DNA of 64,000 nucleotides, from NCBI GenBank assembly GCA_021613535.1, contig CP075492.1, forward strand, positions 8,308,001-8,372,000. The letters run 5' to 3'. Every line of letters starts with the position of its first letter. Position 1 is the stretch's first letter. The position numbers were made by a program, and so were the translations under genes. Below the pieces are notes generated by a model that ran no database searches, had not been told where the DNA came from, and was given only the letters and a program-made list of their open reading frames with translations. Below, piece after piece: positions 2,907-58,594 of the stretch. Origin of the DNA: Adineta vaga (taxonomy: Eukaryota > Animalia > Rotifera).

Positions 2907-5089
2907 TTAATTGATTCTTTTATCTTTACCTGAAAGATTGATTGGAAGATCTTGACTACTTGCATCTGTTTCTTGTTGTTGCTGCTGCTCGGCATATTCC
3001 AAACTGAAATAGAAGTTCAAGAACAGATTCAATAAGAAGACTGGTTTTTATTGACAATGTCATAGTTTCTGTTTGTTTTCATTGATGAAGAAAAAACAAT
3101 AACTACAAATTCTTTTCTAATAAATTGAATAAATGAAAGATGATTAACTCAAATAGTGATAGAGAAAATATCTCGATTGATTGAATTTCAATTAAGATAT
3201 GACTTAGAACTGAAATCTTACCAATCATCTGCAATATGTGTGATACCAGTAAGACGATGTACATAACGTTGAATAACATACCACATACTTTCAATAAAGT
3301 ACGGATATCGAAATCGATCAGGAACTCGAACTTTTCTTTCAATTGTCCATACTTGAATTTGCATGGGAATTTTGAAAGAATTTAAAAAATTGCCACCAAA
3401 CACAAGAGAATCTTCTAGTGTATATACCGCATGTATCCAACCTGATGGTAGAAAAAATGTCCATCCAGCTTCGAGAATAATCATTTGACAATCATTGGAT
3501 GCGCATATATCAGCAAAAAAACATTCATTTTGTCTGCCAGATAAAATCCATTCTTCATACAAACGTAAATGAGATTCAGTTGGAGGTAATAACCAAAAAA
3601 CTTTCTTTCCTTTCAATACATGATACCATACAGATGATCCACCTGATGAAATAGAATTCAGTTAGTCAATCATAACAGATCATCATTTATATATATATAT
3701 ATATATACCCATATCAATATGAAAATCGGTGAAACATTTGGCAACAGACATGAGAACATACCTATAAAACGATATTTATATTCATAGAGAATTGATTTGT
3801 TTTTACTTTCGAGTTTTTGGATAATACATATGATCTTGTTTGAGATTCTTTTGCAATTGTGCTTGAACATCTAACCAATAATCAGGCCATGTATTTGTTA
3901 TCCAATCAATTTCACGTACCTGAAAATGAGCTTATTCAAAACTTTTTGAAATAGAAACATGTCTATTAAACTTACAATGGACGGTGATTCAACATATTTT
4001 TCTAATGCTGTATGACTAAATTCTAATGAAATAACATTTAATAGTTTCGTTCGTTTTTCTGCTGGCTGATCATAATAATCTGTCCAAGATTTCATGGTCA
4101 TTTGTAAGGATTCTTGTGTATCAACATTGACAACATCAATTAAACGTTGAGAACCTATACATGTTCGAACTTCATGGATACTAAATTGAGATGTTGGAAG
4201 CCGTAAGCCCAAACCACGATGTTGTTTAATTACAACCGGATTTGGAAAACCAGTACGTTGGATATACGATATATTGAATTCTATATAGAATGAATATATA
4301 GTTCATTATCGATGGTGATTCTCGAATGAGTGAGACAGTATCCTGCTATATGATGTCAAAAGGTATGAAGAAATTTGTTTTCTCGTTTTCTAAAGATCTA
4401 TACTGACCATCAACAGTGAGTTCTTCAACAAATTTGCCTTGATAATTATTTGAAGCAGCAAATTTCTGTTCAATATTCCATGTTTGTCCTTTTTCCAATA
4501 TTGCTTTAAAGAAAATATCATTGTCATCGTCTGTATAATTCTTCTTTTCCCGTGTACGCTGAAAAATTAAAATTAAATTAATAATCGTATGTATTTACGA
4601 TATGTTAGTTTGTTTCTCTATATAGAACGGATATCTTTATCATTTAGAAAAAGAACACGAATGTACCCGTTGTGATTCGCAATATCTGCTATTAATCATT
4701 TCAAATGCATCTGACCTTTAGTTACTCTAACAGATTCCTTCTTTATCTTAAGAGAGTGTTCTGAAATGAAGAAAGAGAAGTTTTCATATGGACATTCTTG
4801 CTGTTCGTACACTGAGTGATTCATCAATGTCATTGATCGAGGATTTCGGATAGAAAAACCTTGAGCATATACAGAGTAACTCAAAATAACATCTTATTGT
4901 ATACAACGCGCTTATAATTCTACTTAAAAGACGTTTTTGAAAATGTATTATCCTTTAATTAATGTGAACTCTTCTGTTTTAACTGGTTTATTTCTCTCCA
5001 ATCCACTCGATAATTTACTATTTATTTAATTTTCCTTGAAAATATTATATTATACATACCAAACGACGACCTTCTTTATTCGAAGACAT
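2907..5089 (-). CDS. KDM2: JmjC-domain histone H3K36 demethylase, KDM2/JHDM1-like (N-terminal JmjC part; gene probably continues past the left window edge)
   Basis: Spliced exons read MSSNKEGRRL|RTREKKNYTDDD...GLRLPTSQFSIHEVRTCIGSQRLIDV...LLNVISLEFSHT...[39 protein letters not shown]...SGWIHAVYTLEDSLVFGGNFL...RFRYPYF. The HxD...H Fe(II) ligands are intact. The last clear exon either runs to TAA at 2907 or splices at TCAG|gtaaag (2930). Confidence 0.9.
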
Positions 5090-7057: not shown

Positions 7058-10000
7058 ATGCTTCACAGGTAAGACAGTTACGCAGGTATTTTCATGGTAA
7101 CAGAGAGTAACCGCAATAGATGCGAATATATTTATTTTAGTACAATGTTTTATAATTTTCACTACTAGATTGTGAAATGTTACTTCTTGAGATAATAATT
7201 CTGTCTATTCAAATAATTTGAATTCAAGGAATCGTAAAATTATATAGAGCTTGTATATGTACGTAAATGTTAATCTGACGAAGACTTTGAATTCTTTTGA
7301 AACTATCGTTTTGTTATTTATGTCTATCGCATTAGTTATGATCAAGACATAAGAGTTCTCAAATTCATAAAAATATATGACAAACAATCGGAGACACTTT
7401 CTTCTTTGATACTGTCAAAAAAAACAATTTACTTTGCTATCCAATATTGACATTAGAAATTCATAAGTGCTGAAGAATTGACAAAAGAATTTTTACCGGG
7501 AGGAATAGATTTACTCACAAGAAAGCGTTCTCAAAACCACTACATCCACACATCCGGTTTGAGGAGACAGCTAATTTAGGTTAATGGAAGTTTTAAAAAC
7601 ATATTTGAGTAACGAGCCTTTTGAAAGTATATAAAAAAAGGTTTGAAAGAACGATTCAGATATTGAGATCGATAATTATGACCAAGTATTAGAAACCATT
7701 ATTGCAAAATCAGATGTATAAATTGTAGCTATTGTATATATTAATGATAAAAGATTACACTTCTATAAGACAGATGGAGAATACATTCTGTAATTTCTCT
7801 ATTGTGAAAAAGTGATTGATTCAGTTTTAAAGTATACAAACGTCGTCTTTACAAAATACGATCTACTAAGTAGCTTTTTGGATACTTTGGTGTGATTCGC
7901 TCTAAGGACCTGTTCTCATGAGCATTTTAAGGAGAAATTAGACACTTGTTTTTTTTCTTTCGAATAGAAGTCGATCAGTTGATGGTGATTCTGTACCATG
8001 TGAATTTAAGAATCTTCGTATAAATTCAAATGCAAGTTATATGATATGCAAAAATATTAATACGAAATTAAGATCACAAAGAGAAATTAAAGGAGATCCC
8101 ATAGAGCAGTCTAATATAGAACAATTAAGCAGTTATGAACGTAAAATGGCATATTTTATACGTTTTCATCTACGAGATATTTTAACCAGTGATCATCTTC
8201 ATGTTTGGTTTAATATTCAGACAAAATCATTAGAAGAAATTCAAGATCGAAGTCAAATATTGAGAAATGTTCCGGAAGACATCGATGTTGTCTATTGTTT
8301 TGGATCGATGCTTTCATATGATACATTTATTGAACACTCTAATGATCGTTCTCTTGCTCGTATTTGTCTTCAAAAACGCTCTAAAGCAATTCAATTAAAA
8401 ATAGGATCATGTGTTATATTGATTGAACTCAGAAATATTGATTCACAACTTCTAATCAATCATTCAACTAAGGATAACTCTATACAAGTTATTTTTATGC
8501 TTAAATCACCACCGATTATCGAACAACTACAAGGACAAATTCATCGGTAAGTTAGAGAAGTATTTCATTGGATATAAATCATCTTTACTAGACTGTGTCT
8601 TTTCTCATCGTAAATTCGAACGTAAAAACAAAATACGAAATATTTTCTTCTTGAAGTTTTTATATCTTCTAACTGCATGACATCATTCTTCAAACTAAAA
8701 TCCTAAAAATGTCATAGGTTAATTTCTATAATTTATGTATTTAGTGATAGAAAAGCAATGATCGAAGGAATTCCACATTGCAGTGATTTGCTCATTCGTT
8801 TCTTTCCAGCAAGTCATGCATGGATATTCTTACGAGAATTACCAATTGCTGGATATACTCGCAGACCATCCGGTAATTTATTTCATATAAATTTTGCTAT
8901 ATTTGCATGGCAAAAAGATCCCAGTTATTTACTTCCTATGGGTAAACCAACGTACAATTCGTACTATGAATCTTATGCTATGGAAATGCTCTGGTCATTG
9001 GGTTATATCTATCAAGATAAATACAATGCTGATTCACAAGTGATGAACAATATGCGAAATAAGAATTTCTATGATTTAGGTTGTAAAATTTGGCATAATT
9101 TAAAAATAAATCACTGTTATCGTCTTCGAGATGCATTAAATGATCGAAAATCACAAAATAATACTAAGAATTCAAGTGGATCATCAGAATTGAAAGAAGT
9201 AGCATTTGTAATATTAACACCATCTCGTATTGAATATCAACCAATGCCAACAACAATTTCTCATCGAGGTTTTAATTTTTACGATTCTGAACAGTGGTTG
9301 CTTGTTCATATACGAGATCATAATGGAATGGATAAGATTCGTGAATTAGATTTACAGAATAAAGTACGATTCAAGAATTTCATGATACAAGGTATTCGTC
9401 GAAATGATCGTTTGTATCGATATTTTGGTTCATCGAATAGTCAAATGAAAGATCAAGCTGGTTGGTTTTTATCTCTTCCTCAAGGAGAAACGATAGAAAA
9501 AGCACGTGAAAAACTTGGTGAATTATCAAAAATACCCAATGTATCTACATACACGGCAAGACTTGGTTTGTATCTATCAACATCACGATCTGCTGAAGTA
9601 AGATTACTTTTCAATTAACTTGATTCTTTCTAAAAGATTATATGGTATGATAATTAATATTCATTTTTCACATCTAGATCAAGCTAGTGAAGAAAGGCGA
9701 AGCACAAGATAAAGACGGAGGATCATATATAAACCAATCATCAGGATTCTTTTCTTCTCTGATAACGTTCCAAGAAGGTATTATAAATGAAGTCTGAATG
9801 AAGTATTTCTCAGGGAGATATTTTTAGGTTTTTAAATCTGAAAATAAACCAATAGAATATATGGCTATTATTATACCGGATGAGAAGCATAATGACTTTA
9901 ACTTTACTGATGGTTGTGGTAAAATTTCATGGGCTCTTGCCAAAAAGGTTGCGTTGAATATCGGTATAAAAATTAGCGAGAATGTAAGTTGTATCAAAGC

Positions 10001-11557
10001 TTTTCAAACATTCTACTCAATGTATGATTCTAGTCGGATGTACCATCGGCGTTTCAAGTTCGAATAGCTGGCTGCAAAGGCATGTTATCTATAGATCCCA
10101 AATCAAAAGGCAAAGGCAAATTGTACTATATTTTGGTTCGAAAGAGTATGGTCAAGTTTGATAGTGATGATTGGACTCTGCACATTGTCGACCATTCGCG
10201 TCCTAGTAAGTGCTCAATAAAGCAGACAATCTTCATAAACTTTCTATTTAGTGCCACTAAGCTTGAACAATCAAGTTATTCGTTTATTGAGCGACTTGGG
10301 TATTAGTAATGGTATGTTCGAATCGATTCAACAACGATGTATCGACCAGAAAGAATTCTGGCATCCACCACCAAAAAGTTATCTGAATGCAATGGATTCT
10401 CTTGATCAACAAGCAATTGAGGATAAACGAAAACAATACAAAAATGCGTATGTTTCTTGTTTTTTTTATAGTATCCATATACTAGAATGCAGTTGAAACT
10501 TTTCAGAAAACATTTTCTTGAACGAAATAAAATACCATTACCATTAAATGATGGTCGATTCCTATTTGGAATTGCAGATGAAACAGGAACATTGAAACCA
10601 GGACAATGTTTTATCCAGTATCGGGATCTCAGGAATTCACCAAGATCAAAAATATATCATGTACATGAAGGTACAATTGTAACAGTCCATATTTCTAAAA
10701 CATGATTCATTGTTCGAAACAAATTTATTCTAGGAACTGTTATAGTGACAAAAAATCCATGTCTTCATCCTGGAGATGTACGTAAACTTGAGGCAGTTTG
10801 GGTAGAAGCACTAGAGTCTTGTATACGCGATTGTATTGTATTCAGTACACAAGGTCTTCGGCCAAGTTTCAATGAAATGGCTGGTTCCGATTTAGACGGC
10901 GATCAATACTGGGTCTATTGGGGCGATGAACTCAAAGTTACACGACCCGTTGAACCACTATTATATCCATCAGCCGAGAAAAAGCCTAGCGGTTCTATAA
11001 CTAATGATCTCATTGTCGATCATGTACTTAATTCATTTACAAATAGTGTCGTCGGTACGATCGGTAATTTACACAAGGTTATTGCTGACAAAGATCCACG
11101 TGGCACCCTCTCTCCAGAATGCAAAGAATGTGCATCACTCTTTGCTCGAGCAATTGACGCATGCAAAACCGGTGAAGAAATTCCCAAAAATCGAATTAAT
11201 CAACTGAAGGAAAAATATTATCAAACATGTCCAACCTGGATGATGAAATTTGATAAACCAGTTATGGATCCACCAAGTACATCAATCAACGAAATTCTTT
11301 TTCGCAAAGCTCAAGAATCATGGCTAGATGAAGATTGCTATCATGATATTGTTCGACCATTTCAAGGTGTTGAATTTCCTGAAGAATTAATTGCAATTGA
11401 TATTGACGATACAAATGAAACAGAAGGAACTCAAGATGAAAGTCAAATCCAACGTATGGCTATTATATTATGCTGCAAATCATGCTGTTTATGCATATTT
11501 TGGACTGCAATCGTAATAGTCCTTTTATACGGTATTTTAAATTGGTGGAAAAAGTAA
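7058..11557 (+). CDS. Eukaryotic RNA-dependent RNA polymerase (RNAi RdRP family), about 984 aa, with a C-terminal hydrophobic tail
   Basis: Phase-consistent exons 7058-7068, 7968-8546, 8745-9597, 9828-9983, 10034-10205, 10252-10447, 10507-10670 and 10734-11557 (2955 nt). Motifs: YFGSSNSQMK, ARLGLYLSTS, FTDGCGKIS, PSAFQVRIAGCKGML, RKSMVKF, LNNQVIRLLSDLGI, FGIADETGTL, TKNPCLHPGD and catalytic GSDLDGD (DLDGD at 10889-10903). Exon 1 is the least certain. Confidence 0.93.
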
Positions 11558-12983
11558 CAATAATACACTGTTTGGTTGATTTCATTAGTATGTTAAATAT
11601 GTCGCATGGATTGAAATTTCATATAATATACAAAAAATCAGAATTCTTTAGCATTTAGATTCCTCTCACATAATTAATTGACCAAGTCTTTTTTTTCTGT
11701 ACTAATGAGTATTATTCAATAAACTTATTCATAAATCTATAGTTTTCACTGTAATAAAACGGTTTTAAAATACGATAAAAGACAATTCTTGCAGCTCATG
11801 TATATTATCATGCAAGAAAAGAAAAGAATATCCTTATATCATATAGCAGTTGGTGCCTCTGTATAAATGCAAATGAACTACATCATCATTGATACAACAG
11901 CAGTAGTCACCACATATATAAGTGTTTCACTTCGCTCATTCTTCATTTTCTTTCGGTCACGTACGACACTTAACTTGATAGATATGGTTCATTAACAGAT
12001 CAACCACATCATCTTAAAATCATAAACAAATTGTCAAAAAAGATGAGCATGTCTTCGAAGAAAAACGATTAGTCAATTTTTCTGAATAATCAACCTGTCT
12101 TCGTTTATTTATCTAAACGAGTTCATCTCTTTTTCGTTGGTGAAAAGAAATCAATGATGCAGCAAACGTTGGCACTATATAAATAGCTCAATTTTTCTTC
12201 AATATTTCAGAATCAATTGTCAATCCGTAAGTACCATTCAATATGAGGTTAATCTTCGAACAGGTTCACATTTGTTTGCTGATGATTAACAAAAAATTCA
12301 TAGAAGCAAGGATCTGTGTACCTGCACGATATTAGCCGAGATTTGACGATATACTTCTTTTTAAACCATATAATTTATCCGAAAAAAATTGGAATTAAAC
12401 AGATTTTCAAGAAATAGGCTCATCACCTGTAAACTGAACGGATTCGATCTATTTTCAGTTGCCAGGTCTTTGGCCCTCTTGCGAGAATCTCTTTGCATCG
12501 ATGATAGATATATTTTCTTTTTCTTTCTTTAATAGATCATTGTCTGAAAGAAAATCTGCGCTTAAAAATGCTAATTTTTTTAAGAATATATATACAAACA
12601 GATGTATTTTTACATATGATCAAGGAAAGATGGAAATCAATTGTTCGTATAGATTTGCTGTTGACTTTATTTTATTACACAACATTGTCGAAAGTAGATA
12701 TTTAAATTTTTTTATTTTTGAATAGCAAATGATGAAACTAATGAATTCTTCTTCTTCTTCTTCGTCTTTATTTACAATCAAAAAACCATTGCACATGAAA
12801 AAATGTTCGAAAAACACGAAGGATAAATTGATTCTATTTACAGACAAGAAAAACGAGACAAACAATGAGAATTAGGCTCAGATAAACACATTGTTATATA
12901 TATATATATTAATTACATTCAATAACAAATTTGACAATAGATATCACAAGATGGAGAATTCAATTGATTTTTAGTCAGAAAAA

Positions 12984-15266
12984 TTAACCTTGTGATGAAA
13001 TTTGTGGTGGACGTAATAATTCTTTCTCTTGATCTTTAGTTAGTGCATACAACAGATGTTTATTAACTTGACGCTAAAAAAAACACCGAAAGATATAATT
13101 ATAATATGCACTCGAACGAAAATCTTACTCTTCGGTTAAAAAAGAATAATTCTATGACGACAATAATAGCAATCAATGATAGTAATGCAATGATGATGTA
13201 AACTAATTTCATCGATTCATAGCCGTAACGACCTTTTTCAAGAATCATACTAGCACGTTGCAATCGATGTAATGTTTCATTGTTCAGTGTAATTGTCTGA
13301 AAAGATAATCATAAAAAAAACAGAAATAGTAAAAGAAATGATTGATCCAATCTTTACTTGATCAATCCACATCATTGGAATCAATCGTCGAACAGCACGT
13401 GTATGAGTAGGTCTAAACATACCAACGAATTCGGTGTCTTTCTTGAGAAAAGAAAAATCTTTCGTCTTACTCAGTCGATCCATCTGGATTAAGTCTAAGA
13501 CGATCAATCCAAGCATTTGTACTTAATTGAATACGTAATTGAGCTCGAACTGGTGTACCAGAGATTGGTTCGAAATATATAGTTGATTCATGTTTATTAA
13601 AATCCGGTTGAAAATTAATATTTGTCAATGATGAATTATGACCATACATATGTGGTTTTGATAAAAAGACAGTTTCCGTAGGAATTTCAGCTATAAAGAC
13701 AAGTATGAATAAATAATTTAGATCAAGAAATTTTCTCATACCAGAAAGACATTTTGTAATATCGAGTTTATCTGCTTCGGGACAAGTTTCATCCATTTGT
13801 GGACATTGTTCTACATCAATTAATTTTAAAACATATTCATGTAACATATCAAAACCAAATTTAGACACTGTTCGATTGTATCGAAGTTGGACAGGTCTAA
13901 AAGTATCAAATTAAATATTAACGAAATTTTCTATTCTATCTGTACAAACCGACAAAAATCAGGTTGAAATACATTGAGAACTTTTCGATTGGGTGGATTT
14001 CCCAATGGTGGAAAAGTTAAACCATCTAAAATCAAACCAAACAAATTCTTTTCAATCGTTCGAAATATATATTTTCTTACCAAAAATATCCGTTCGCCAA
14101 TCGTGATTTGTTGTTTTAAATGGTGTACTAAATTAAATATTATATTCATATAACATAAAACTAGTAAATCAAATTATATTCTTTACTATTCAGTTTCAAA
14201 ATCAATCATTTGTCCTTTCATTGAAGAATTATTAATACCAGTATGAATAGTAAAATTAAATCCATTTGTTCCATTGTACTAAAGAAGTAATGATAATCAT
14301 TAATCGAATTTTTCGTATTTGATCGATTCTTACTCGATAGATAAATCCATATTTATCTCTGTTAGGTCCTTGCATTCGTGATGAAATTGCAGCAAATATG
14401 GGAGAAATATATCCTTCTAATTTATCAATCGCTTTTGAATAGTTAAAGGCATTATTTCCACCAAGAATATAGAAGATAGGATCAGCCACACGACCAAATT
14501 TTGTTCGAAACATCTATAAAAATCATTGCTTTTTCTTCAACAAAACAATTATGTGTCTTTAAGAAATTAACTTACAACACGAAGTATATCAACGAAGGCA
14601 CCTTCTTGGTTGAGTATAGTTTCATTGTAATCACCAACGAGTGAATATACGTTCAATTGAGTAATGAATTTTCGAATTATTATTTAACCATTTAACATTA
14701 TTCTTTTTAACGGTAACTCTATAATATACAAAAATTGCAATCATAATACTTGTTCACAATTTCATAGCAATCTAAAGACAACTTACCTGTACATAAACGG
14801 CAGTGTCTCTTCAAAATTCATCATTGGATTATTTGTATCGGTCATAATATCCATATAATTTGTTATATTAAATAGCCGATAAGCACGTATGGTTTGAATC
14901 GGTGGAATAGTCCAACTCTCATTTCCATCGGATGAGGGTGCTAAACGTATTTTCTAAACAATGATGAAAAAAAAAGAATCAATTGCTTTTCATCTGAAAA
15001 AATGGATTTTGATTTACTTGAAGAACTTTTTCTTGAATAATATGTTCGACACGTGGCCATGTTGATACAAAAATAATAAAAGGTACAAAAAGTAACAGTA
15101 GAAATAATACTTCACATGTTACACGAGCAGGAAGTGAACATATTCTTAGATTTCTTTTCGTTGGAATTGTACTATAAAAAGAAGAAGAGAAAAAAACGAA
15201 TTACAATTAAAGAAAATCTTCAGAAATAAACACTCACGGAGTAGTCGATTGTGATTGTTGTTCCAT
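12984..15266 (-). CDS. CD36/scavenger receptor class B (LIMP-2-like) membrane glycoprotein
   Basis: N-terminal TM (VLFLLLLFVPFIIFV), then WTIPPIQTIRAYRLFNITN, NGTNG, DGLTFPP, VFQPDFCR, VFLSKPHMY, KHESTIYFEPISGTPVRAQLRIQL, LIPMMWIDQ, a C-terminal TM and tail ...KDQEKELLRPPQISSQG*. Multi-exon. Confidence 0.88.
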
Positions 15267-17401: not shown

Positions 17402-18514
17402 ATGGAAAAACAACAATCATTGCAAATTATTTGTCTTCAAACACACTTGTCTCAATCCCATTATCAATCCTATCCAATCCTTAAGCAATATCTTCTTCAA
17501 CGTATTCGTCTTAGCCTAAAAACTCAATCATCAACAAGTAATACACGATCCATTGAAGAAAATGATCAACAACCGACTTTAGTTATACTTCCAGAGTGTA
17601 CAGGTACATGGTTGTATTATATGTGTGTGCCGATGCCGAATTTTCTACATAATTATTTCTTTAATCCTCGTAATAATCGAAGAATTCAACCTTTATTATT
17701 TATTGCATACACATTAATCACTCATTTACGATCATTTTTCAAAGAAATCTATAGAAACTATCATTCGAAAAAATCATGGTTAAGTATACTTCGACATTCT
17801 TGGCTTAGTCTTTTTTCAGAACGAACATTTTCAATTTATAAACGATTATTTAGTGAATTAGCTGTAGAAACAAATTCTACTATTGTGGCTGGTTCGATTT
17901 TCTATCGTGGAGATTCGAATGAAGGAAAATTATACAATATGTCGTATGTTTTTGAATCAAAAAATGGTTCGATTTGTCTGCAAGCCGGTAAACGATATCC
18001 TGTTGCTGATGAAAGTGATTTTATTGATTCCTATAAACATTCACCAATGATTTATTCCATTCCAAATACAAATATTGATATTGGTATACTTATATGTGCT
18101 GATAGTTGGATGCCAGAAGTTTATCATGAATACAATCGTTTAGAATTAAATTCTCATCGACGTTTTCTTTTTATTATTGTTGCATTGAATACCGGTGAAT
18201 GGAATATTCCATGGCCTGGTTATGATACAAATGTTGATGTTCCAAACGATGTGGATAGGAAACATTTGATGACGTATTCTTTACCACAAGCATGGTTTCA
18301 ATATGCAGTCAAACGTGCTTTTAATGTCTTGAACGAACGAAATGATTTACTTGGATATGGTGTAATTTGTTGTCAAGGTGTATTGAATCTAATGAATGAT
18401 ATTCATGCTCAAGGAGAAAGTATTATTTTAATAAAACGTTCGAGAAATGAAGAAGAAGTTTTATATGAAGCAAAAACATGCATTGATGAAAAAATATTAA
18501 CATGTGATTTTTGA
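17402..18514 (+). CDS. Carbon-nitrogen hydrolase (nitrilase superfamily), intronless, bacterial-like
   Basis: Single 370-aa ORF with the Glu-Lys-Cys triad contexts LVILPECTG, AGKRYPVADE and IGILICADSWMPE, plus TIVAGS...LYNMSYVF. Confidence 0.88.
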   Translation: MEKQQSLQIICLQTHLSQSHYQSYPILKQYLLQRIRLSLKTQSSTSNTRSIEENDQQPTLVILPECTGTWLYYMCVPMPNFLHNYFFNPRNNRRIQPLLFIAYTLITHLRSFFKEIYRNYHSKKSWLSILRHSWLSLFSERTFSIYKRLFSELAVETNSTIVAGSIFYRGDSNEGKLYNMSYVFESKNGSICLQAGKRYPVADESDFIDSYKHSPMIYSIPNTNIDIGILICADSWMPEVYHEYNRLELNSHRRFLFIIVALNTGEWNIPWPGYDTNVDVPNDVDRKHLMTYSLPQAWFQYAVKRAFNVLNERNDLLGYGVICCQGVLNLMNDIHAQGESIILIKRSRNEEEVLYEAKTCIDEKILTCDF

Positions 18515-18577: not shown

Positions 18578-20260
18578 ATGAATAAAGAAGCATTGATCGA
18601 TATTGGATCACAATTATCCCGTTTACGATTATATCCTATATTTGATATATGTCATTATTTAATAACTGCTTTACATGTACGAGAGGATATACAACAATAT
18701 CCAACAGGTAAGAAATAATACTAACATAGACAGATATGAGAAGAAAGTACTCGTTTATACCCATGTCACAATAATCGAGAGAAAAGTCATTTTTCATGAC
18801 AAATACAACTGTCTGTTCTGATTTTGATTGTATATTTTCAGTTACTCAAAACTTTACACGTCGACATCCATTCTCATGTTGGTTATCAACAATGTTGTTA
18901 TGTTTTTCCAATACAATGTTAACGAATTTTTTACTTGGTGAAAGTTTAATACAAGATTTTTTACAGCATCAACATCTTCTATTAGCTACAATTTGTTGGT
19001 ATTGTGTGTTTTATTCTCCATTGGATTTATTAGGTCGTTTTATTCGATTTCTACCCATTCGTCTTGTGATCGGTGTTGGAAAAGAAATTTATCGTACAAG
19101 AAAGATCTATGATGGAGTTCGTTCAACATTAGTCATATATCCGGAAGCTTATATTGTTATTATTCTGATTGGAGCTATTCGAGGTCAGAAGAAAATTCAC
19201 GATAACAAAAAAGGAAAACGATTTCATTTAGGTTGTGGTGGATCAATAATGTCATCGATTGATCGATTTATTCGAGGTATTTGGTTACCTACACAACATG
19301 AATTTCTATTTCCATCATTGTAAGTCTATTTCAAGATATGTTTTCTTTTATAACTATTTACGACAACGTATGCTCGATAATTCTTTCACAGAACTCATCA
19401 AGTTCTAATGATGTGTGGAAAGCTGTACTGTCACAGATGTCATACGAGAAAGTTTTTAGTTAAATTAAATAAGATTTTGCCTTTATTTTAAACAGTAATG
19501 CAATGCATATGATTGATAATATCAATGAAATTATAAATCAATAATCTTGTCTTGTCTCTTCTCATTGGATTTCTGTCAATCTCGATAGGAAGTCTATTGA
19601 TTGTACATATTCTCAAAGAATCTATGTACAGTTTGATATTCGTTAAATAGTAATTATGGCGCAATCACAGAAGAAAATGTTAATAGTTTTGTATTCTTTG
19701 ATATATCAGTAAGAAAATATTATGATGCAGTTCGTAAAGGTCATCAAGTTGATATTTTATGCTTAGTGATGACGTATTGACATGTTGAAAAGCACTTTTT
19801 TCTTTCGTATAATTCTAGTACAACAAAAGCATGTTTTCTTTCATCAGTAATCTTCTTATTATCTCAATTACAAATACTCAAATTTGAACATGAATTAATC
19901 TATTTATGTATTGCTTCGATGTTTATTTACGTTCGAATTATCACTTTATTCTTCAAACAATATGATCCATTTATGCCATTTGAAAATATTATATCAGGTT
20001 TATTATTCAATAGTTGGACAGAATTATTTGTACGTATTGAAAATTCTTTCGTCAAACATCAAGATATCTAAGATTTGTATTTCTAGGCTGATGCATATCG
20101 ACGTGCAGCTATGCCAAATACATTACCGGCACCACAAAATGCTGCATTACCAGCAACGATGTCATCATTGACTAGTACGGCTGGTATGGCGAATATAAAA
20201 AAAGAAACGATGTCCAACGAAGCATCAATAAAAGGATTTGATGGAAAGAAACGAGATTAG
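18578..20260 (+). CDS. TMEM38: Trimeric intracellular cation channel (TRIC/TMEM38)
   Basis: YPIFDICHY, FTRRHPFSCWLSTMLLCF, NFLLGES, LATICWYCVFYSP, KEIYRTRKIYDGV, RGCGGSI, RGIWLPTQHEFLFPS, DPFMPFEN. Spliced; stop TAG at 20258-20260. Confidence 0.9.
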
Positions 20261-56896: not shown

Positions 56897-58594
56897 ATGG
56901 CTGATGTCGTTCATCGAATAAATGAACTAACACATACACGTCTCTCATGGTTTGGATGTTCAGATGATGATGCTTGTAATCGTCTCAATCATCGTCATAC
57001 GGTTTTAATGTTATTAATCTTTTCAGCTATATTAACTTCACGTTTATTTATATCGGATTTAATTATTTGTTGGACACCGGGTGAATTCACAGGTAAAAGA
57101 CAATCATCATTTTGTATTCTGTTCTTTTTTTCAATTGATTGACAGATTAATTAAAGTTGAAGAGAAAAAGAAAATGAACTATTGTAGTCTATATGTCTCG
57201 AAGCATAAACAATAACGAGTCAAATATGACAGACTTGACACATACATATATCGATGATGAGTATGTTCATTATGAAGAAGATAAATGGACTAAAGCTTGA
57301 CATGACATTTAATAGGTTATCTATTTATCTCTCGTCATTAAAATCCCTGAGGCAATGATCTGAACTTTAAAATCTAATAATAAAATAAAATGATTAAGTC
57401 ATTTTTCTTTCTTGTCCAGGTAATTTTGTTTCCTATACACGTCATTATTGTTATGTAACAAATACTTATTATATATCGGTCAATGAAACAATTCCGACAT
57501 TAAGTAATGCTCATATACGTCGGAAACGTTCGATTTATTATTATCAATGGTTACCAATATTACTTGCATTTCAATCTTTATTATTTCTAATTCCACGTTT
57601 AATCTGGAGTAGTTTTAGTTCACGTTGTGGAATTAATTTACAACATTGTCTATCACCTCAATTTGATTATCGTACAAGTCGATATAAAGTTCATCATTTA
57701 ACAACCATGCTTCGTTTATTATCTCGTGCCAAACAACATGATTTCGATCGTATGACTACAACAAATCATGTGAATAAGACAAGTCTAACAGCAAATATTC
57801 ATTTATTAAAAACATTTTGTATTCCATTTTTCTTTCTTAATGAAAATCCATTTCATGGTTATTATCTTGCAAATCTCTTTCTTATTGTAAAAATACTTTT
57901 TCTTATTAATTCATCTTTACAATTACTTTTTTTAAATACGTTATTAACGAAAAATTCTATTTTTTATGGTTTGGAAGTTATTGACAATTTCTATCGAGGC
58001 GAATATATTGTTGGATCAAGAATCTTTCCCATCAGTGTCTATTGTGATTTTAATATTATCAAAATTGGTCAACCGACACTTTATACAGTAATAAAAATAC
58101 AAACGATCTTTTCAAAAAAATTTCATTGTTTTTGTTTATTACAGGTTCAATGTTTATTACCAATGAATGTTTTCAATGAAAAAATCTTTACAATTATTTG
58201 GTTTTGGTTAGTTTTTTTAACTTTAACAAATTTAAAAAGTGTTCTTTTAACAATTATACGAAGTAATTTTCCACAATTTAATTATGGTTATGTAGCAAAT
58301 TATTTAGATTTATATTCTAAACAAGAACGTTTTAAAAAACATACTCTTGTTAAACGTTTTATATTTGATTATTTATCAGCTGATGGAATCTTAATATTAA
58401 GATTAATCTCAGAAAATATCAGTGATTTATTAACAAGTGAAGTTATTAATGAACTTTGGAATGAATATAAGAAATTATCAAATTTATCGCCAACAAATCG
58501 TGAAAAATATCAACGTTTGAAAGGAACTAATCCTCCAACAACAGATGTGATTACAACAACAAAAAATATTCATTATCGTCATATGTTCCGATAA
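56897..58594 (+). CDS. Innexin gap-junction protein
   Basis: DDDACNRLNHRHT, IICWTPGEFT, YCYVTNTYY, YYYQWLPILL, PRLIW, IFPISVYCDF, VQCLLPMNVFNEKIFTIIWFW, YLSADGILILRLISEN. Confidence 0.95.

What the first reader, a model, noticed from the sequence alone, without database searches (positions are those of the whole stretch)
11290..11557. Catalytically intact RdRP ending in a Cys cluster plus transmembrane tail anchor: candidate membrane-tethered small-RNA amplification system
Seen in the sequence: after the last RdRP-like block (PTWMMKFDKP...STSINEILFRKA) the frame runs through an acidic linker (DIDDTNETEGTQDES) into MAIILCCKSCCLCIFWTAIVIVLLYGILNWWKK*. That is five Cys, a hydrophobic stretch of about 17-20 residues and a short basic tail, all in the same exon as the DLDGD active site, with AATAAA at 11718. 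Established: QDE-1/RDR/RRF-EGO-type RdRPs are soluble and normally carry further helical sequence after this block. Animal piRNA biogenesis factors (Zucchini/PLD6, GASZ, TDRKH/Papi) are anchored in the mitochondrial outer membrane. Inference: this is a tail-anchored, possibly palmitoylated RdRP that places dsRNA/secondary siRNA synthesis on an organelle membrane. I know of no described cellular RdRP with this architecture.
Basis: partly seen in the sequence, partly recalled or inferred. Interest (0 to 1): 0.85.

Follow-up and report, generated by a model that had tools for sequence, protein, structure and literature searches.

The report
Membrane-anchored RNA-silencing polymerase of rotifers
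Bdelloid rotifers have an RNA-silencing polymerase that lacks the usual end domain and instead ends in a conserved membrane anchor with nearby cysteines, so they probably copy silencing RNA on a membrane surface; I found no paper describing this for a cell's own enzyme of this family.

Summary
Observation confirmed. This is an Adineta vaga cellular RdRP (PF05183, DLDGD at 10889-10903). Spliced transcript contigs run through the tail unspliced. All eight orthologues with a readable end finish the same way: a hydrophobic-acidic motif, acidic linker, Cys cluster, Ile/Val-rich helix, basic tail. Three NCBI models had spliced the tail out. A sister group has the helix without the Cys cluster. The catalytic residues are kept; the C-terminal head domain is missing.

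The window's own haplotype is frameshifted in that exon; the transcripts seen come from an intact allele.

The anchor is well supported. The mitochondrial/Zucchini analogy is weak: Zucchini appears absent, and the helix is ER-like. Localisation, acylation and activity are untested. The scan reached the same idea earlier on other DNA of this genome (s1-505278, probably the chromosome-2 paralogue).

The parts
7058..7068 (+). Coding end of exon 1 (ATG at 7058; donor after 7068)
   Evidence: 5' loose end of transcript contigs maps here; the joint to 7968 is inferred from frame and GT-AG
7968..8546 (+). Exon 2, N-terminal region
   Evidence: Spliced contigs
8745..9597 (+). Exon 3 of the gene: PH-like/helical region and start of PF05183 (slab)
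   Evidence: orthologue model aligns to RDR2 from residue 101
9678..9777 (+). Exon skipped in the 984-aa model; insertion with a basic amphipathic helix (about 9738-9777). 100 nt in the window (frameshift), 105 nt in the transcribed allele
   Evidence: Joints 9597-9678 and 9770-9826 with extra letters; translation; orthologue inserts; helix 503-522 in the orthologue model
9828..9983 (+). Exon with the TDGCGKIS motif
10034..10205 (+). Exon with first-barrel motifs (AFQVR, GCKG, SMVKF); transcribed allele has 6 more nt after 10109
10252..10447 (+). Exon with LNNQVI motif and short neck region
10507..10670 (+). Exon, start of second barrel
10734..11737 (+). Last exon: second barrel, active site, bridge helix, trigger loop, linker, tail, 3' UTR
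   Evidence: One unspliced piece 10732-11685; a further contig reaches 11737; PF05183 E 7.5e-44
10889..10903 (+). DLDGD catalytic Asp triad
   Evidence: aligned to RDR2 DLDGD
11390..11410 (+). Conserved IAIDIDD motif at the start of the acidic linker
   Evidence: 4-7 of 8 residues identical in five orthologues against 2-6 of 15 in the next linker stretch; function unknown, loosely like the IxM ER-export signal
11411..11455 (+). Acidic disordered linker
   Evidence: Low pLDDT coil in both models
11471..11494 (+). Cys cluster CCKSCCLC on the cytosolic side of the helix (candidate S-acylation sites)
   Evidence: 2-6 Cys in every group-A orthologue; acylation is inference
11480..11548 (+). Predicted transmembrane helix, 23 uncharged residues
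   Evidence: KD19 2.65; confident helix in the model; conserved character
11549..11557 (+). KK tail and TAA stop
11718..11723 (+). AATAAA poly(A) signal
   Evidence: contig end at 11737; same flanking context in the A. steineri orthologue

Best explanation
A bdelloid-specific, head-less cellular (two-barrel) RdRP that is a tail-anchored membrane protein with its catalytic body in the cytosol. Shown: gene structure, transcription of the tail, intact catalytic motifs, loss of the C-terminal head, a conserved Cys + hydrophobic helix + basic end, and an internal basic amphipathic insertion that goes with membrane-type C-termini. Inferred: the helix is inserted after translation, most likely into the ER and perhaps passed on to Golgi or endosomes; the neighbouring Cys are S-acylated; the amphipathic helix lays the enzyme on the bilayer; there it copies membrane-associated RNA (membrane-bound mRNA, transposon or viral RNA) into antisense RNA that feeds the animal's Argonaute/Piwi pathways. 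The membrane may take over the template-positioning role of the lost head. The window's haplotype is frameshifted and may be a null allele or an assembly error; the transcribed allele is intact.
For: Tail in spliced contigs from three studies. Tail in 8 of 8 readable orthologues, three recovered from genomic read-through. Sister group and a Didymodactylos copy also end in a hydrophobic helix; groups A+B form a 100/96 clade. Only 2 of 165 other RdRPs over 700 aa end in a hydrophobic stretch. Allelic changes in the helix are all hydrophobic to hydrophobic. dN/dS 0.18-0.31 against orthologues. Motifs matching QDE-1 Q736, R738, K743, K767, P964 and the Asp triad are kept. Orthologue model matches RDR2 (Z 36-40) and ends at RDR2 970 / QDE-1 1183; QDE-1 cut at 1192 is monomeric and active (PMC9508822). 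Insert hydrophobic moment 0.44-0.58 and mostly +2 to +6 in tailed lineages against 0.15-0.38 in the long-tailed bdelloid copies. Hydrophobic helix with low tail charge favours ER (PMC5450235). Plant phasiRNA synthesis is membrane-associated (PMC5207768).
Against: No localisation, acylation or activity data. No dedicated TM predictor was available; I used hydropathy and AlphaFold. Head nonsense mutants of plant RDR2/RDR6 abolish silencing. The targeting rules come from mammals and yeast, and tail charges of +2 to +3 overlap the mitochondrial/peroxisomal range. The insert and tail are shared by kin, so their co-occurrence is one or few events, not many. One copy inside the clade (P0008) lacks the helix. 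The RNA nature of the runs is a guess by the tool, though the contigs are spliced.
Confidence: 0.66

Rival explanations
1. Same enzyme, but anchored in the mitochondrial outer membrane (or peroxisome) as part of a piRNA-making platform.
For: Basic tails of +1 to +3 lie near the mitochondrial and shared means of 1.1-2.5. A. vaga lacks ping-pong and RdRPs are proposed to replace it.
Against: Helix hydropathy 2.5-3.9, higher than typical mitochondrial anchors; group B tails carry -1 to +2. Zucchini reported absent and not found by my scan. Juxtamembrane Cys clusters are typical of secretory-pathway proteins (own knowledge).
Confidence: 0.15
2. Membrane-anchored but catalytically weak or dead: a scaffold, RNA trap or regulator that has lost function with the head.
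For: Head is needed for silencing in plants. The RPH motif varies (RPS, RPT, RPN) in group A. The reference haplotype is frameshifted and the two alleles differ at 11 of 16 changed codons by amino-acid changes.
Against: All catalytic motifs kept in six species, core about 70% identical, dN/dS at most 0.31. Head-less QDE-1 is active. Soluble-looking bdelloid relatives also end without a head, so head loss is older than the anchor.
Confidence: 0.12
3. The helix is not a membrane span but packs on a partner protein or lies on the membrane surface through acylation only.
For: Related bdelloid copies end in short amphipathic helices or in a Cys pair without a helix (P0008).
Against: Group A helices are 15-23 uncharged residues, hydrophobic all round and with low sequence identity (5-11 of 22-27): the pattern of a bilayer span, not an interface.
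Confidence: 0.05
4. Artefact: read-through into an AT-rich intron or UTR that happens to translate as hydrophobic.
For: 9% of open frames in the window end in a moderately hydrophobic stretch; NCBI models of three orthologues splice the tail out.
Against: Unspliced in transcripts; same architecture and stop position (214-222 residues from DLDGD, one longer by a local duplication) in all orthologues.
Confidence: 0.02

Closest known systems
Arabidopsis/maize RDR2 (PDB 7ROZ, 7RQS, 7W82) and the RDR-alpha type
   Same: Fold from the PH-like domain to neck 3 (Z 36-40, 734-750 residues aligned); DLDGD; KNP Pro-gate
   Different: No C-terminal head; membrane tail in its place; 20-40 residue amphipathic insertion before the first barrel; about 23% identity
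Neurospora QDE-1 (PDB 2J7N, 7Y7P)
   Same: Two-barrel catalytic core and product-binding residues
   Different: QDE-1 is a soluble dimer with head and regulatory C-tail; this protein ends at the equivalent of 1183, like the active monomeric 377-1192 truncation (PMC9508822)
Expanded bdelloid RdRP clades RDR I/II (Nowell et al. 2021, PMC7943196)
   Same: Bdelloid-specific, divergent, multi-copy (about 24 loci here)
   Different: The paper does not mention membranes or transmembrane segments (0 occurrences); I could not assign this gene to clade I or II
HCV NS5B (PMC13306062)
   Same: A tail-anchored RNA-dependent RNA polymerase with a cytosolic catalytic body
   Different: Viral right-hand fold, unrelated; an analogy of architecture only
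Plant RDR6/SGS3 siRNA bodies and membrane-bound polysomes (PMC5207768)
   Same: Secondary siRNA synthesis near ER/cis-Golgi membranes
   Different: RDR6 has no membrane span; the association is indirect
Mitochondrial piRNA platform (Zucchini/PLD6, GASZ, TDRKH)
   Same: Small-RNA enzymes held on an organelle by a single helix (own knowledge)
   Different: No polymerase in it; Zucchini appears absent from A. vaga

Membership tests
Eukaryotic cellular RdRP (PF05183) | Profile match above cut-off | tested here: met
   150.8 and 60.7 bits for two exons against 23.8; 376-381 bits for whole orthologues
Eukaryotic cellular RdRP (PF05183) | DxDGD triad and barrel residues Q/R/K/K, Pro-gate | tested here: met
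Eukaryotic cellular RdRP (PF05183) | Two double-psi barrel fold with slab, bridge helix, trigger loop | tested here: met
   On the R. socialis orthologue model, pTM 0.82; RDR2 Z 36-40, QDE-1 Z 31-33
Canonical RDR2/QDE-1 architecture | C-terminal helical head domain | tested here: not met
   Structural match stops at RDR2 970 of 1133 and QDE-1 1183; then disorder and one helix
Eukaryotic cellular RdRP (PF05183) | RNA-templated RNA synthesis | not testable with these tools
   Needs an assay
Tail-anchored membrane proteins | Single hydrophobic helix within about 30 residues of the C-terminus | tested here: met
   23 uncharged residues then KK; KD19 2.65; helix in model
Tail-anchored membrane proteins | No signal peptide or other membrane span | tested here: met
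   Highest KD19 elsewhere 1.26 (on the model from 8041; the 28 upstream residues are polar); hydropathy only
Tail-anchored membrane proteins | Post-translational membrane insertion | not testable with these tools
   Needs fractionation or insertion assay
Mitochondrial outer-membrane tail anchors | Moderately hydrophobic helix with a basic tail | tested here: inconclusive
   Tail +1 to +3 fits; hydropathy 2.5-3.9 is ER-like
Zucchini-based piRNA platform | Zucchini/PLD6 in the genome | tested here: not met
   Eight PLDc_2 matches, none Zucchini-like (the search gives lower bounds); reported absent in PMC12256650
SNARE-derived tail | SNARE motif before the helix | tested here: not met
   Only sub-threshold PF05739 hits on the helix itself in two orthologues (15-16 bits against 26.8); none for the window's tail
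S-acylated juxtamembrane Cys cluster | Thioester-linked fatty acid | not testable with these tools
   Cys conserved in position; needs acyl-exchange chemistry

The most novel reading that the evidence does not exclude
Bdelloids run small-RNA amplification on an organelle surface with an integral-membrane, acylated, head-less polymerase held by two membrane contacts; different paralogues (Cys + helix, helix only, amphipathic helix only) serve different membranes, for example ER-bound mRNA or the membranes where incoming foreign and viral RNA appears, in place of the missing Zucchini and ping-pong steps.
Probability: 0.3. Interest if true: 0.85.

Novelty: new variant of a known kind. Interest (0 to 1): 0.66.

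Why it matters
Cellular RdRPs are known as soluble enzymes that reach membranes or granules through partners. An integral-membrane one would mirror how RNA viruses such as HCV tether their polymerase, and would show where an animal without ping-pong or Zucchini amplifies small RNAs. It gives a first handle on why bdelloids keep about 25-40 RdRP genes (PMC7943196 leaves their functions open): paralogues differ in how they would meet membranes. A natural head-less family also tests what the head domain is for, which the RDR2 structure paper calls unclear. All of this is testable with GFP-tail fusions and a soluble tail-less enzyme.

Tried and rejected
Splice at the 11454 donor: no such joint in four runs. 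Exact look-up of the last-exon protein: not on record. Pfam on the tail alone: nothing; SNARE origin not supported. ESM Atlas by features: only generic RdRP clusters, none informative on tails. Literature searches for a membrane-anchored cellular RdRP: none found; the library lacks most subscription papers. Polarising the allele differences with orthologues: mixed, no clear sign that the window's allele is decaying beyond the frameshift. The three orthologue proteins that seemed to lack the tail were gene-model errors. The A. ricciae orthologue's contig ends before the tail. IxM-type ER export signal for the IAIDID motif: only a loose resemblance (M present in 3 relatives), left as a lead. The joined, spliced model was not sent to any search tool; searches used single exons by reference or database orthologues, and joined models were built only inside scripts.

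Full report
Setting. The genome is 100.8 Mb in six contigs, about 30% G+C, with short introns. The nearest paralogue, on contig 2, is recorded as Adineta vaga UJR27363.1, so this is the bdelloid rotifer A. vaga. It holds about 24 RdRP loci. The gene lies at window 7058-11557 on the + strand, between a JmjC-like gene and a CD36 gene; the A. steineri orthologue also has CD36 downstream on the other strand.

The observation. Spliced contigs from two studies give seven GT-AG-type joints and cover 10732-11685 in one piece; a third study reaches 11737, just after AATAAA at 11718. There is no joint at the 11454 donor. The runs are only guessed to be RNA, but the contigs lack the introns. In this AT-rich window 9% of open frames end in a moderately hydrophobic 19-mer and 0.5-1.5% in one as strong as this; only this gene adds a Cys cluster and a basic end.

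Gene model. Both spliced contigs include that exon. In them it is 105 nt and in frame (1021 residues, with 6 more nt after 10109). In the window it is 100 nt and leads to a stop at 9833, residue 517. Frame could be restored by skipping, by a donor after 9791 (36-nt intron) or by an acceptor at 9856; none was seen. The contigs differ from the window at 17 coding SNPs, so they represent another allele. The window's copy is either a frameshifted allele or an assembly error; I could not tell which. The tail changes between alleles (C to S, W to V, L to F; V to A and L to F in a second organism) keep the helix hydrophobic.

Conservation. A phmmer search with the last exon and two searches with full-length relatives gave two orthologue groups that form one clade (100/96). 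Group A is this gene. R. socialis, R. sp. Silwood1 and three metagenomic proteins (P0001, P0002 with its near-copy P0152, P0151) end in an acidic linker, 2-5 Cys, an Ile/Val-rich helix and a basic tail. The A. steineri, R. sp. Silwood2 and R. sordida proteins seemed to lack it, but their genomes read straight through to the same tail; the NCBI models had spliced it out. That makes 8 of 8 readable orthologues. Helix hydropathy is 2.5-3.9 and tail charge +1 to +3. Identity is about 70% in the core and 5-11 of 22-27 residues in the tail; an IAIDID-like motif at the start of the linker is better kept than its surroundings. Group B (the contig-2 paralogue and copies in A. steineri, A. ricciae, R. 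sp. Silwood1) has a helix without the upstream Cys cluster, and a Didymodactylos copy has one too. Of 165 other RdRPs over 700 residues, two end hydrophobically, each a lone case. dN/dS against four orthologues is 0.18-0.31.

The enzyme. Motifs matching QDE-1 Q736, R738, K743, K767, the Pro-gate P964 and the Asp triad are present in the window and its orthologues. An AlphaFold model of the R. socialis orthologue (pLDDT 82, pTM 0.82) matches RDR2 at Z 36-40 and QDE-1 at Z 31-33, and the trimmed match ends at RDR2 970 and QDE-1 1183. After that come about 45 disordered residues and one helix; the window's own last exon models the same way. So the C-terminal head is gone. QDE-1 cut at 1192 is a monomer with higher activity in vitro (PMC9508822), so activity is plausible. 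Against this, nonsense mutations in the head of plant RDR2 and RDR6 abolish silencing (bioRxiv 2021.08.31.458351). Other bdelloid copies without a membrane tail also stop early, so head loss probably came before the anchor.

A second membrane element. The skipped exon encodes an insertion between the RxGLYL and TDGxG motifs. That interval is 38-46 residues in plants and tick, 50-57 in the long-tailed bdelloid copies, and 65-84 in groups A, B and a third, short-tailed group (two shorter NCBI models may have skipped the exon). The extra part is a basic amphipathic helix, for example SSLFSSIKRLFRKPKK in A. ricciae: hydrophobic moment 0.44-0.58, mostly +2 to +6, against 0.15-0.38 in the long-tailed copies. 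It is helix 503-522 in the model. The third group ends in short amphipathic or aromatic helices. Insert and membrane-type C-terminus therefore go together, but among kin, so this is one or a few events. I could not measure whether the helix and the tail lie on the same face of the model.

How it most likely works. Shown: a transcribed, conserved, head-less RdRP with one C-terminal hydrophobic helix. Inferred: tail-anchored insertion with the enzyme in the cytosol; acylation of the Cys; docking by the amphipathic helix; copying of membrane-associated RNA into antisense RNA for Argonaute/Piwi proteins. For the membrane I favour ER and the secretory pathway. In mammals a hydrophobic helix with low tail charge goes to the ER and high hydrophobicity overrides moderate charge; mean tail charges are 0.2 (ER), 1.1 (mitochondria), 2.5 (shared) and 6.0 (peroxisome) (PMC5450235). 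The charge here is ambiguous, the hydrophobicity is not. The mitochondrial analogy is further weakened because Zucchini is reported absent from A. vaga (PMC12256650) and my scan found only other phospholipase-D types. A. vaga lacks ping-pong, and RdRPs have been proposed to replace it. Plant phased siRNAs arise on membrane-bound polysomes (PMC5207768). I put the anchor at about 0.9, activity at about 0.8, and ER/secretory over mitochondria at roughly three to one.

Comparison and novelty. It is a member of the cellular RdRP family by profile, motifs and fold, and it fails the canonical architecture test for a head. It works like HCV NS5B in layout only (PMC13306062). The survey of bdelloid RdRPs never mentions membranes, and five literature searches found no membrane-anchored cellular RdRP, within a library that lacks most subscription papers. 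Verdict: a new variant of a known kind, interest 0.66.

Limits. No TM or acylation predictor was available. The joined model was not searched against databases; exons and orthologue proteins were used. One reads call was allowed, so the frameshift could not be checked in DNA.

Noticed in passing
window 9770-9833: The reference haplotype is 5 nt shorter than the transcribed allele at the end of exon 9678-9777, giving a frameshift and stop; heterozygous null or assembly error.
   Followed up: partly
L054 385-1119 (P0008): A relative inside the A+B clade, on a long branch, has no membrane helix and ends in LRLLCCQNL, a Cys pair that could take a lipid instead.
   Followed up: partly
L067, L068, L069 (P0172, P0162, P0186), P0007, P0010: A third bdelloid RdRP group ends in short amphipathic or Trp-rich helices and has the internal insert; no A. 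vaga member was identified among the loci read.
   Followed up: partly
L040, L042 (P0230, P0168) and P0173, P0179: Sister bdelloid RdRPs carry a 430-540 residue C-terminal extension with no Pfam match in place of the head.
   Followed up: partly
L051, L052, L053: NCBI gene models of three orthologues splice out the membrane tail with spurious introns, which hides the feature in protein databases.
   Followed up: yes
P0160, P0161 (Rotaria sp. Silwood1): Group B models carry an N-terminal LRR region; real fusion or merged neighbouring gene not checked.
   Followed up: no
L043 (G000:C3 about 2.885 Mb): Partial RdRP copy: only the 3' part matched, with a further fragment near 2.879 Mb.
   Followed up: no
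L064-L066: Three phospholipase-D genes with two HKD-like motifs that differ from animal PLD1/2; possibly foreign genes.
   Followed up: no
window 3218-3616 (-), 13467-13868 (-), 17402-18514 (+), 18796-19323 (+), 57707-58594 (+): Neighbours: JmjC/JHD-like, CD36 family, carbon-nitrogen hydrolase-like (370-aa ORF, just under cut-off), TRIC channel, innexin.
   Followed up: no
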